From NCBI GenBank assembly GCA_900088475.1, contig FLMG01001221.1, positions 1-64,000 of the forward strand: a DNA stretch of 64,000 nt, given 5' to 3'. Below the pieces are notes generated by a model that saw only the letters and a program-made list of their open reading frames with translations, did not search any database and was not told where the DNA came from. Position 1 is the first letter of the stretch. Every line of letters starts with the position of its first letter. The position numbers and the translations under genes were made by a program. Positions 58,288-60,411 of the stretch are shown here, one piece after another. The stretch comes from Hyphochytrium catenoides (Eukaryota; Protista; Hyphochytriomycota).

Positions 58288-60411
58288 TTACTCCTCATCA
58301 GCATCTCTCTTCTCGACAAGCACTGCATCATCGATGCCCATCTCTTCTACATCCGGCAGCTCGTAGCTCTCCACTCGCTGAAGAGAAGCCTCAAGCTTTC
58401 CAGAGCTTCGACGCCCATACCCGAACCATTTATAGTTTCCTACCATGGTCCCAGACTAGCAGCAGCACGATGTGCAAAGCGGTTAATAAAGCGGGATGGA
58501 TAGCTGTTAAGGAGAAGGGTGAAGAGAGAGACAGGAACGTGTAGCCACAGATGGGAGCGTAAGCAGAGGAATCCCAAGGAGAAACACTGGAAAAAGAAAA
58601 AAAGTAGGCAATATTAGCTAATGAGCAAGAATAGAGGAAAGGAAAGCTACCTCTATGTCAATGGTGCCGGTGTAGAACTCCTCAGTCTCATTAGAGTAGC
58701 GCGCGTGGATCTCAAAGTCTCCTCCGTCTTGGTACGTTCCTTGCCACACGCAAGTGACGTTGTCATAGTTATCATGGAGGGTGCCAGCGCCCCACACCAT
58801 GCCTGACGATGCGATACCACTGCAAAGAAGGCAAAGAAGGAATCCGGACAGTTAGACGGAAGATATGTCTCCGCCAGCAACTGAAGCTATTGAGAAACAG
58901 AGATGTCAAGGAAAGCGAGAAGAAAGAGAGAGAGAATCAAAGTCAAAGAGAAGGAAGGTGTTGAGACACCAAAAGAGGTGATAAAGCATACCCCTTGTCT
59001 AGAAAGACTCTGAAGTTATTGGACTTGGTGATGTTGCCGTCATAATCATTAATGGTTGTGGCCATGCAGTCATACACGCCGGAGATACCATCTCCGCCTT
59101 CTCCCCGTCTGCTCGCTCCTCCTCCAAGCTCTTCTCGGATGGCCTTGACATGGAGCGCAGAGAGCCCAAAGATCTCCATAAACTCGTCGTCACTCGTTTC
59201 TCTGAGTTTTCTTCCATCCAGGGAGGAAGGGAGAGACTTGAAAGGCCGCAGGACGATGCTCTGCAGGTACTTTTCCACCTCTTCGGGCGTCCAGTTTTCC
59301 ACTTCTGTCGGCAGTGAGCTGGCGCCTGTCATGGCTTCTTTATTCTCTCCAACGACGCCACACTTCTTTAGCGAGAGCATGGTGTTCACCCAGACTTTCT
59401 CCTCCTCTTCTTCTTTGTACATCAAGGCATTAGTACTAGCAAGTAGTAGCCGCACATGCTTGTGTTTGTTCCAGTCCAGATCTGGGAATACTATGGGCAG
59501 GATGTGAGGCAGGCGGTCCTTTGAGGAGAGATTCTTCCTTTTTATGTGCGAAAAGAAGAGAAAAGAAGGAAGATGCAGAGAAAGGGAGCCCGGACAGTAG
59601 ATATGGAGAGATAGACAGACAGGGAGGCAAAGGGAAGGAGGAGCGAACAAAGGTTAGCCAGCAAGGACAAGATGAAAAGCCAGGGGCACGTAACAGCGGA
59701 TATGTTGCCAACGACGCGGAGCATGAAGGAAGGGCTAAAGGCGGAGAGAGCAAATGAGAATTAGAGACAGATTGACATGTAGTTATTGCTCTTCATAGAT
59801 GGAGGGAGAGAGAGAGGCGCTGGAACACTGAAGCTACATGTGCACCTGTATGCATAGGCGAACTCGGCCTGGCACTCAGGAGAAAGAGCCCATGGGGTGT
59901 TGATAAGAGGTAGGAAGACTTTGCAGCCATCCACAGCGTCAACGATCTCCGACCGGAATTCTGCTCCTCCGCTCATCTCTGTGCAGACCCACACAGATAT
60001 GCCGCGAGAAGAGAGATAACGCTTGAGGGAAAGAGCTATCTCTGTCATTGTGCGGCAATTCAGACTGATCATCACTTGGCAGTTCGAGGTAGAGGAAGGT
60101 TGTTGCAGGGAAGAAAGGCCGGTCAGTGCTTGGTTTGCCTCCTCTCCCTTCTCTACAAGCCCATTTTTTGGCTCTATCTTGATCTCCCTCCTGCCTCCTG
60201 GCTGCTGCTGGGCGATGGCCTGTTCAAGCTTCAGCAGCTGCTCAGAAGAAAGAGCACTTTCGAGCCTCTCAACTTGCTTCGACAGGAGCTGCACTTGCTG
60301 CACTAGTGCCGTCACGAGCTCATTAGCGTCTCTTTGAGTTTGGTTGTCGAGCCCTTGTACTGCCTGAGACACTGCAGCTTGACTCTGCGATGCACTGGCA
60401 GCTGCTCCCAT
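58288..60411 (-). CDS. Predicted N-myristoylated coiled-coil - TIR - SAM - beta-rich domain protein, about 482 aa, 4 exons
   Basis: Exons 60411-59846, 59537-58992, 58819-58651 and 58455-58288 total 1449 nt in frame. MGAAAS start. TIR: QVMISLN..LKRYLSSRGISVW..GAEFRSEIVDAVDGCKVFLPLINTPWALSPECQAEFAYA..ILPIVF. SAM: VENWTPEEVEKYL..LDGRKLRETSDDEFMEIFGL..HVKAI. Confidence 0.85.

What the first reader, a model, noticed from the sequence alone, without database searches (positions are those of the whole stretch)
58288..60411. Membrane-tethered coiled-coil-TIR-SAM protein with the catalytic Glu intact: candidate SARM1-like NADase immune/death effector
Seen: four short ORFs splice into one 482-aa protein with an MGxxxS myristoylation consensus, a Gln/Leu coiled coil, a TIR domain, a SAM domain and an unrecognised beta-strand-rich C-terminal domain (GVYDCMATT..WGAGTL..WQGTY..YTGTIDIESGTMVGNYKW). 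The TIR alphaC segment SPECQAEF has Glu at the position of the SxWCxxE catalytic Glu. Known: TIR NADases in SARM1, plant TNLs and Thoeris need this Glu and are activated by oligomerisation, which SAM domains provide in SARM1 (ARM-SAM-SAM-TIR). Inference: this reversed TIR-SAM order plus a lipid anchor and a putative sensor domain may be an undescribed protist signalling or cell-death module.
Basis: partly seen in the sequence, partly recalled or inferred. Interest (0 to 1): 0.8.

Follow-up and report, generated by a model that had tools for sequence, protein, structure and literature searches.

The report
Lipid-anchored TIR-SAM-barrel protist protein
A real four-exon gene in a protist genome encodes a 482-residue protein with a lipid-anchor motif, a coiled coil, a TIR immune-signalling domain, a SAM domain and an unnamed beta-barrel. 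It belongs to a small uncharacterised family, and its TIR site is only half like that of NAD-cleaving enzymes such as SARM1.

Summary
Four minus-strand exons with GT..AG introns add up to 482 codons. Database homologues run across all three junctions. No RNA run was listed for this genome, so the splicing rests on homology.

Domains:
- **N-terminus:** MGAAAS start, conserved as MGxxxS in 5 of 7 relatives, followed by an unbroken heptad coiled coil.
- **TIR:** Pfam TIR_2, 33.4 bits against a cut-off of 28.
- **SAM:** below the Pfam cut-off alone, but supported by profile tests.
- **C-terminus:** an eight-strand-type up-and-down beta-barrel with no Pfam family.

The SARM1-like NADase reading is only partly supported. 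Glu183 aligns with the catalytic Glu of flax L6 and of Cat1, and the fold matches NADase TIRs. However, the Trp of the WxxxE motif is replaced by an invariant Glu (E179), as in the non-enzymatic adaptor MyD88. Published L6 and ROQ1 Trp-to-Ala mutants lose NADase activity.

TIR-SAM fusions are already recorded, for example in amphioxus. Other TIR genes in this genome keep the canonical SEWCLKEL motif.

Best reading: an oligomerising, membrane-associated TIR signalling protein with a ligand- or partner-binding barrel. I put NAD cleavage at about 40%.

The scan noted this same stretch twice before (s1-349945, s1-345867), not on other DNA. The joined protein was not searched or folded, by rule.

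The parts
59846..60411 (-). Exon 1 (566 nt): start codon, MGAAAS motif, coiled coil, linker, and the N-terminal half of the TIR domain. It ends ..AYAY + AG.
   Evidence: Pfam TIR_2. Homologues align from residue 1.
60394..60411 (-). MGAAAS: N-myristoylation consensus (Gly2, Ser6).
   Evidence: MGxxxS is present in P0001, P0002, P0005, P0006 and the window, and absent in P0004 and P0023. The modification itself was not tested.
60208..60333 (-). Predicted coiled coil, about residues 27-68.
   Evidence: Heptad scan: 8 of 8 a/d positions are hydrophobic (A V L V L V L L), with no Pro or Gly between 21 and 70. Weak Pfam hits to coiled-coil families.
59357..60078 (-). TIR domain, about residues 112-250, interrupted by intron 1 (59538-59845).
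   Evidence: Pfam TIR_2. Family profile against PDB hits Cat1, SARM1, L6 and MyD88. The model of the closest homologue P0001:100-318 (pLDDT 85.1) matches RUN1, AbTir, SARM1, SPARTA and TLR TIRs.
59863..59865 (-). Glu183, at the canonical catalytic-Glu position of TIR NADases.
   Evidence: Aligned to the Glu of L6 ..WCLMEL.. and Cat1 ..WCWDEL... Invariant in 14 of 14 family sequences.
59875..59877 (-). Glu179, which occupies the place of the conserved alphaC Trp of the WxxxE motif.
   Evidence: The same S-x-E-C pattern occurs in MyD88. The importance of the Trp is described in the paper read.
58992..59537 (-). Exon 2 (546 nt): the C-terminal half of the TIR, the SAM domain, a Gly-rich linker and the first strands of the barrel.
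   Evidence: 100% self match only in the own genome. 17 relatives in the 1.84-billion-protein library.
59102..59329 (-). SAM domain (the tested segment, exon 2 residues 70-145).
   Evidence: Alone it is sub-threshold: SAM_1 E 0.04-0.09, plus SAM_2 and SAM_PNT. The close-clade profile A4 hits almost only SAM structures. hhalign against the Pfam-positive SAM clade gives probability 92.9%, E 3.8e-7. The homologue model has a four-helix bundle here.
58651..58819 (-). Exon 3 (169 nt): the central strands of the barrel.
   Evidence: tblastn with P0002-P0005, E 1e-11 to 1e-14.
58366..59098 (-). C-terminal beta-barrel domain, about 125 residues, interrupted by introns 2 and 3.
   Evidence: Alignment A7. 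Model of P0002:326-450: pLDDT 81.6, ten strands. Matches to meander beta-barrels. No Pfam family at E up to 10.
58288..58455 (-). Exon 4 (168 nt including the stop): the last barrel strands and an acidic tail of about 25 residues.
   Evidence: tblastn. No further downstream exons were found.

Best explanation
This is a real, single-copy, four-exon gene. It encodes a 482-residue cytosolic protein built, in order, from an N-myristoylation motif, a coiled coil, a TIR domain, one SAM domain, an eight-strand-type beta-barrel and an acidic tail. It belongs to a small, uncharacterised eukaryotic family: a TIR-SAM core with variable C-terminal modules. Proposed mechanism (inferred): the coiled coil and the SAM domain hold several copies together. 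The myristate, made more effective by oligomerisation, places them on a membrane. The barrel binds a small molecule or a peptide or partner. Clustering of the TIR domains then produces the output. That output is either cleavage of NAD+ or a related nucleotide through Glu183 (about 40%) or scaffold-type TIR-TIR signalling as in MyD88 (about 35%). Shown here: the gene model by homology, the TIR fold and family, SAM homology, the barrel fold, conservation of the motifs, and a modelled SAM self-contact. Inferred: lipidation, oligomeric state, ligand binding, any enzymatic activity and any immune or death role.
For: Gene model. A relative's genomic contig (L016) carries the two TIR halves contiguously. 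Another relative has an uninterrupted 604-aa ORF on a 1,928-nt contig (P0023), while its genomic contigs carry about 108 extra bases bounded by GT..AG inside the TIR. TIR. Glu183 at the catalytic position and invariant. BB-loop Gly-Gly aligned with Cat1. SAM. SAM self-association model: score 0.49 against a best control of 0.19. That mark was reached by 21 of 30 proteins solved as pairs of one chain and 0 of 23 solved as single chains. On eukaryotes it was reached by 17 of 29, but by only 1 of the 7 with no older solved relative, and by 0 of 30 single chains. The runs agree in at least 92% of contacts, and the partner's pLDDT is at least 71. Because SAM dimers are solved, the pass may come from memory. 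Barrel. Variable C-terminal modules behind the same TIR-SAM core: GON domain in P0012, another beta domain in P0017, SKICH-like in P0002.
Against: No RNA from this organism could be laid on the gene. The joined protein itself was not folded or searched. The WxxxE Trp is replaced by Glu, which argues against canonical NADase or cyclase chemistry. The window's SAM is below the Pfam cut-off on its own. One relative, P0005, has no SAM at all, so SAM is not essential to the family. The myristoylation motif has no second membrane signal in this copy. Barrel matches are purely geometric (designed barrels, OmpA-type barrels, avidins) and say nothing about a ligand. No functional data exist for any family member.
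Confidence: 0.55

Rival explanations
1. A non-enzymatic TIR adaptor or scaffold of the MyD88/TLR type. The TIR only nucleates TIR-TIR assemblies at a membrane, and the SAM domain and coiled coil provide avidity. There is no NAD+ cleavage.
For: The alphaC motif S-x-E-C is the MyD88 pattern, and MyD88 and TLR6/TLR2 TIRs are among the profile hits. The Trp needed for NADase activity in L6 and ROQ1 is absent. TLR and adaptor TIRs match the model about as well as NADase TIRs do. Canonical SEWCLKEL TIRs exist elsewhere in the same genome, so this copy is the divergent one.
Against: The Glu at the catalytic position is invariant across sequences down to 25-30% identity, where MyD88 has Gln. An invariant Arg and an invariant Trp four residues upstream of S-x-E-C (R10, W31) suggest a conserved pocket. 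The best-scoring solved relatives are enzymes: Cat1, SARM1 and L6.
Confidence: 0.35
2. A TIR enzyme with a non-canonical substrate or product, for example nucleic-acid-derived 2',3'-cNMP synthesis, NAD-RNA decapping, or plain hydrolysis without cyclisation. This would use an ExxxE site rather than a WxxxE site.
For: Both Glu179 and Glu183 are invariant. In the published survey, aromatic residues at the Trp position go with cyclic products, while ADPR-only producers vary. Other TIR activities are on record: titles (PMC10937652; 10.1101/2021.11.09.467869).
Against: There is no direct evidence. No characterised TIR enzyme with Glu at this position was found here.
Confidence: 0.07
3. A gene-model artefact or decaying gene: the four ORFs are not one expressed gene.
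For: No RNA run was listed for this genome. This copy lacks the C-terminal SKICH-like domain seen in P0002, P0004 and P0005.
Against: All exons are open and in the same order as in the homologues. The junctions restore continuous alignment, all splice sites are GT..AG, and every invariant family residue is kept. The next gene, a GH18 on the other strand, lies about 600 nt past the stop and leaves no room for lost exons.
Confidence: 0.03

Closest known systems
SARM1 / TIR-1 (animal ARM-SAM-SAM-TIR NAD+ hydrolase)
   Same: It contains both a TIR and a SAM domain. The TIR N-terminal half aligns with SARM1 TIR (E 2e-4), and the model matches SARM1 TIR at TM about 0.7 by target. SARM1's SAM is among the SAM profile hits (6o0t, E 0.0065). 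There is a Glu at the canonical catalytic position.
   Different: The order is reversed (TIR before SAM), with one SAM instead of two. There is no ARM autoinhibitory domain. It has an N-terminal myristoylation motif plus coiled coil, and a C-terminal beta-barrel. The Trp equivalent to SARM1 W638 is Glu.
MyD88 / TLR-type signalling TIR domains
   Same: The S-x-E-C motif at the start of alphaC is the same as MyD88's SKEC. MyD88, TLR6 and TLR2 are profile hits. The TIR is combined with another oligomerising module.
   Different: MyD88 has Gln where this family has an invariant Glu. There is no death domain, and no LRR ectodomain or transmembrane helix.
Bacterial coiled-coil TIR NADases (AbTir) and filament-forming Cat1
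   Same: The N-terminal coiled coil followed by a TIR is arranged as in AbTir. Cat1 is the best solved sequence relative (E 3.1e-5). AbTir TIR matches the model at TM 0.78 by target.
   Different: Those proteins keep the WxxxE Trp (Cat1 alignment). They have no SAM, no barrel and no lipid anchor. This is a spliced eukaryotic gene.
TIR-SAM domain combinations in animals (e.g. amphioxus model Brafl1_131196) and the TIR-SAM relatives P0007, P0012 and P0017
   Same: The same TIR-then-SAM order. P0007, P0012 and P0017 share the W..S.EC..E motif and have Pfam-significant SAM domains. The amphioxus combination is recorded in PMC2575513.
   Different: None of these has been characterised. They lack the MG motif, the coiled coil and this barrel: P0012 carries a GON domain and P0017 another beta domain. 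Kinship with the amphioxus gene was not tested.
Soluble meander beta-barrels (avidins, YceI, nitrobindin, lipocalin-like GrlR, Gid4, Cap15)
   Same: The same up-and-down barrel topology. Avidins score Z 9.0-9.4, YceI 8.8, the Gid4-type CTLH receptor 8.4, and designed barrels 11-12.7. Foldseek TM is 0.4-0.62.
   Different: Sequence identity is 4-15%. There is no Pfam or Atlas family. Outer-membrane barrels score equally well, so the matches are geometric only. No ligand can be inferred.

Membership tests
TIR domain superfamily (Pfam TIR_2, PF13676) | Profile match above the curated cut-off | tested here: met
   33.4 bits against a cut-off of 28 on exon 1 alone. 35.7 bits in the genome scan. Homologues score 39-50 bits.
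TIR domain superfamily (Pfam TIR_2, PF13676) | Flavodoxin-like alpha/beta TIR fold | tested here: met
   Tested on the closest homologue P0001:100-318 (64% and 51% identical to the two window pieces), not on the window's joined protein. pLDDT is 85.1. 43 PDB TIR matches at E <= 1e-3.
TIR NADases (SARM1, plant TIRs, AbTir, Thoeris ThsB, Cat1) | Catalytic Glu at the start of alphaC | tested here: met
   E183 aligns with the Glu of L6 WCLMEL and Cat1 WCWDEL. Invariant in 14 of 14 sequences.
TIR NADases (SARM1, plant TIRs, AbTir, Thoeris ThsB, Cat1) | Aromatic residue (usually Trp) four residues before the Glu (WxxxE) | tested here: not met
   The position is Glu179, invariant in the family. The role of the Trp is described.
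TIR NADases (SARM1, plant TIRs, AbTir, Thoeris ThsB, Cat1) | BB-loop glycine | tested here: met
   The family 'M-x-G-G' aligns with Cat1 'P-G-G-G'. G6 of A9 is nearly invariant. This rests on alignment only.
TIR NADases (SARM1, plant TIRs, AbTir, Thoeris ThsB, Cat1) | NAD+ cleavage that depends on the Glu and on self-association | not testable with these tools
   This needs a biochemical assay.
SARM1 family | ARM - SAM - SAM - TIR order with an autoinhibitory ARM domain | tested here: not met
   The order here is coiled coil - TIR - SAM - barrel. There is no ARM hit and only one SAM.
SAM domain (PF00536 / PF07647) | Profile match above the Pfam cut-off | tested here: not met
   The window segment scores 12.5-14.7 bits against cut-offs of 20.5-24.
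SAM domain (PF00536 / PF07647) | Homology at profile level and a helical-bundle fold | tested here: met
   The A4 profile (window plus 5 close relatives) hits almost only SAM structures: liprin-beta 5.8e-5, PHC3 1.6e-3, SARM1 SAM 6.5e-3. hhalign against relatives with Pfam-significant SAM gives 92.9%, E 3.8e-7. Four helices occupy the corresponding part of the P0001 model.
N-myristoylated proteins | Met-Gly start with a small or Ser residue at position 6 | tested here: met
   MGAAAS. Conserved in 5 of 7 full-length relatives. Actual acylation is not testable here.
Calycin-like ligand-binding barrels (lipocalin / avidin / YceI / nitrobindin) | Eight-strand meander barrel plus family sequence signatures | tested here: inconclusive
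   The fold agrees: Z 8.8-9.4 to avidins and YceI and TM about 0.5 to avidins and nitrobindin. No sequence family matches, and membrane barrels score as high.

The most novel reading that the evidence does not exclude
The family is a new class of ligand-gated, membrane-associated TIR enzymes. An ExxxE active site, with Glu in place of the WxxxE Trp, would make a product different from those of known TIRs. The unnamed beta-barrel would be the sensor, and coiled-coil and SAM oligomerisation would be the switch. It would be a protist immune or death module assembled independently of SARM1.
Probability: 0.12. Interest if true: 0.8.

Novelty: new variant of a known kind. Interest (0 to 1): 0.5.

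Why it matters
TIR domains are the shared currency of immunity and cell death in bacteria, plants and animals, but almost nothing is known about them in free-living protists. This gene gives a compact, testable protist TIR protein with three self-association or localisation devices (myristate, coiled coil, SAM) and a candidate sensor barrel that belongs to no named family. Its active site is a natural experiment: it keeps the catalytic Glu but has Glu instead of the Trp that L6 and ROQ1 need. An assay would show whether the Trp is dispensable in some lineages or whether this Glu-bearing TIR is a scaffold. The same genome also carries canonical WxxxE TIRs, so the two types could be compared in one organism.

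Tried and rejected
- **RNA evidence:** The look-up of sequencing runs listed no RNA run.
- **Word-index protein searches:** both were blank. Exon 2 gave none, and the P0005 barrel region found only itself. The length window of that tool excludes many relatives, so these blanks mean little.
- **Atlas searches:** feature searches gave only leads, namely rotifer TIR_2 clusters at 0.78-0.83 and unnamed clusters for the barrel.
- **Pfam on the barrel:** no Pfam hit for the barrel in four relatives, even at E 10.
- **Missed 3' exons:** I looked for exons encoding the SKICH-like domain of P0002, P0004 and P0005. There was no tblastn match in 50001-64000, so this copy simply lacks it.
- **Paralogues:** none in the own genome.
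- **PADLOC and NCBIfam:** only weak TIR-like hits (ThsB 2.6e-5, FxsC), which do not discriminate.
- **Literature:** no paper describes this family.
- **Membrane beta-barrel reading:** rejected, although OmpA-type chains score Z 10-12. The protein is a spliced cytosolic eukaryotic protein, and designed soluble barrels score the same.
- **Organism:** the match of 4,759 records with the 4,758 scaffolds plus mitochondrion of Hyphochytrium catenoides, and of the intron size (PMC5795050), is suggestive only. The assembly sizes differ (61.0 vs 65.7 Mb).
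Full report
**What is in the sequence.**
On the minus strand of 58288-60411 there are four open segments bounded by standard splice signals.

| Exon | Coordinates | Length |
|---|---|---|
| 1 | 60411..59846 | 566 nt |
| 2 | 59537..58992 | 546 nt |
| 3 | 58819..58651 | 169 nt |
| 4 | 58455..58288 (with stop) | 168 nt |

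The introns are 308, 172 and 195 nt, all GT..AG. Each intron contains an in-frame stop or a frame shift if read through. Each exon was used by reference, and database homologues stood in for the whole protein.

**Is the splicing real?**
No RNA run was listed for this genome, so the evidence is comparative.
- A search of 1.84 billion representative proteins with exon 2 found 17 relatives at E <= 1e-3.
- Seven of them (P0001-P0006, P0023) share the architecture and align without a break across all three predicted junctions.
- tblastn places their segments on the four exons in the right order.
- The closest relative (P0001, 52% identical over exon 2) comes from a metagenomic genomic contig, L016. 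There the two TIR halves are contiguous, with no intron 1. Its called ORF runs off at the position of the window's intron 2.
- In a marine relative, P0023 is an uninterrupted 604-aa ORF on a 1,928-nt contig. The genomic contigs L018-L020 carry about 108 extra bases bounded by GT..AG inside the TIR. That family member is therefore spliced and expressed.

The gene is single-copy in its own genome.

**N-terminus.**
The protein starts MGAAAS. MGxxxS is kept in 5 of 7 full-length relatives, and one of them (P0002) adds a Cys at position 7. Residues about 27-56 have hydrophobic residues at 8 of 8 a/d heptad positions, and there is no Pro or Gly between 21 and 70. Myristoylation and a coiled coil are therefore reasonable predictions. 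This copy has no second membrane signal, so stable tethering would need oligomerisation.

**TIR domain.**
- Pfam TIR_2 passes its cut-off on exon 1 alone (33.4 vs 28 bits) and scores 39-50 bits in the relatives.
- A family profile finds Cat1 (3.1e-5), SARM1 TIR (2e-4), L6/L7, MyD88 and TLR6 among solved structures.
- The AlphaFold model of the closest homologue's TIR-SAM region has pLDDT 85.1. It matches RUN1, RPP1, AbTir, SARM1, TIR-1 and SPARTA TIRs, and TLR TIRs about as well.

All 13 database family members carry the motif W..S.EC..E, and the window carries it too. In the profile alignments the second Glu (E183 here) sits on the Glu of L6 'SKWCLMEL' and Cat1 'SDWCWDEL'. That is the catalytic position.

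The first Glu (E179) sits on the Trp of those motifs. MyD88, a non-enzymatic adaptor, has the same S-K-E-C but Gln at the catalytic position.

According to the paper read (bioRxiv 10.1101/2022.05.07.491051):
- AbTir E208A is inactive.
- AbTir W204A has reduced activity and loses most cyclisation.
- L6 W131A and ROQ1 W82A show no NADase activity.
- All cyclic-product TIRs surveyed have an aromatic residue there.

From my own knowledge, several non-enzymatic TLR TIRs also keep a Glu at this position.

Other TIR genes in the same genome keep the canonical SEWCLKEL. At least 17 TIR_2 matches exist in the genome.

**SAM domain.**
- On its own the window segment is sub-threshold. Its only Pfam hits are three SAM families (E 0.04-0.2), and its best PDB hits include SAM domains such as liprin-beta.
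- A profile made only from the window and five close relatives, none of which has a Pfam-significant SAM, hits almost only SAM structures: liprin-beta 5.8e-5, PHC3 1.6e-3, SARM1 SAM 6.5e-3.
- That profile aligns to the SAM of relatives that do pass Pfam with 92.9% probability, E 3.8e-7.
- The homologue model shows a four-helix bundle there.

A two-copy model of the window's SAM segment passed the tool's mark. The score was 0.49 against a best control of 0.19. The mark was reached by 21 of 30 proteins solved as pairs of one chain and by 0 of 23 solved as single chains. On eukaryotes it was reached by 17 of 29, but by only 1 of the 7 with no older solved relative, and by 0 of 30 single chains. 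The runs agree in at least 92% of contacts, and the partner's pLDDT is at least 71. Because SAM dimers are solved, this shows likeness and is not proof. One relative (P0005) lacks the SAM altogether.

**C-terminal domain.**
The beta-rich region spans the end of exon 2, exon 3 and the start of exon 4. It has no Pfam match in any relative, even at E 10, and no named Atlas cluster.

The model of the P0002 equivalent (43-52% identical to the window pieces; pLDDT 81.6, pTM 0.72) is an up-and-down beta-barrel. Its best structural neighbours are:
- designed soluble barrels (Z 11-12.7);
- OmpA-type barrels (Z 10-12);
- avidins (Z 9.0-9.4);
- YceI (Z 8.8);
- the Gid4-type substrate receptor (Z 8.4);
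- by Foldseek, GrlR, nitrobindin, lipocalins and Cap15.

This fixes the fold class, a meander barrel of the kind that often binds small molecules or peptides. It does not fix a family or a ligand.

Relatives carry different modules behind the TIR-SAM core. These are this barrel plus a weakly SKICH-like domain in P0002, P0004 and P0005 (E 0.028), a GON domain in P0012, and another beta domain in P0017. The window copy ends in an acidic tail and has no further exons. The neighbouring GH18 gene lies about 600 nt away on the other strand.

**How it most likely works.**
- Shown: the parts and their order.
- Inferred: the coiled coil and the SAM assemble several chains. Several myristates together give membrane affinity. 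The barrel receives a signal. Clustered TIR domains give the output.

I put about 40% on an E183-dependent nucleotide-cleaving activity, possibly hydrolysis without cyclisation given the missing Trp. I put about 35% on a MyD88-like scaffold, and the rest on other chemistries or artefact.

**Comparison and novelty.**
This is not a SARM1 family member. The order is reversed, there is one SAM, no ARM domain, and the Trp is missing. TIR-SAM combinations are already recorded (amphioxus, PMC2575513). Literature searches found no description of this family. It is best called a new variant of a known kind: a TIR signalling protein with an unusual site and an unnamed barrel.

The genome is probably Hyphochytrium catenoides. 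It has 4,759 records, against 4,758 scaffolds plus the mitochondrion, and the mean intron there is 208 nt (PMC5795050). This is an inference, and the assembly sizes differ.

Noticed in passing
own genome: L003, L004, L006, L011 (C1502, C3717, C63, C2706); also C1337:16984-19207 and C3882: At least 17 TIR_2 matches in the genome. Several paralogues keep the canonical SEWCLKEL / SQWCLKEL motif. Some sit in tandem pairs on C1502, C3717 and C3882. One 663-aa open frame on C1337 carries two TIR_2 matches, and a third lies in a separate frame about 1 kb upstream.
   Followed up: partly
P0002:455-599, P0004:500-651, P0005:395-548 (relatives, not the window): Relatives carry an extra C-terminal domain of about 150 residues that the window copy lacks. 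In P0002 it is weakly SKICH-like (Pfam E 0.028). SKICH is the domain of autophagy receptors such as NDP52, which would be an interesting link if real.
   Followed up: partly
window 55908-57668 (+): A single-exon 586-aa ORF with a GH18 chitinase-type domain (Pfam 38.5 bits). It has a long Ser/Pro-rich N-terminal region and a hydrophobic C-terminal end, and lies about 600 nt downstream of the TIR gene on the other strand.
   Followed up: partly
window 47757-49070 (-) and 62821-63480 (+): A Na+/H+ exchanger ORF (118 bits) and an MFS transporter fragment (40 bits) flank the region. There is no sign of an immune gene cluster around the TIR gene.
   Followed up: partly
window 53333-54663: Long (CT)n/(GA)n tracts, which translate as SLSLSL runs, and a short run of N (XX in the ORF translation). 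This is probably a scaffold gap.
   Followed up: no
L018:3080-3190 (marine metagenome relative): The intron of the marine relative splits the TIR motif itself, between ..ECK and YEF... This is a different position from the window's intron 1, and P0001's genome has no intron there at all. Intron positions in this family are therefore fluid.
   Followed up: partly
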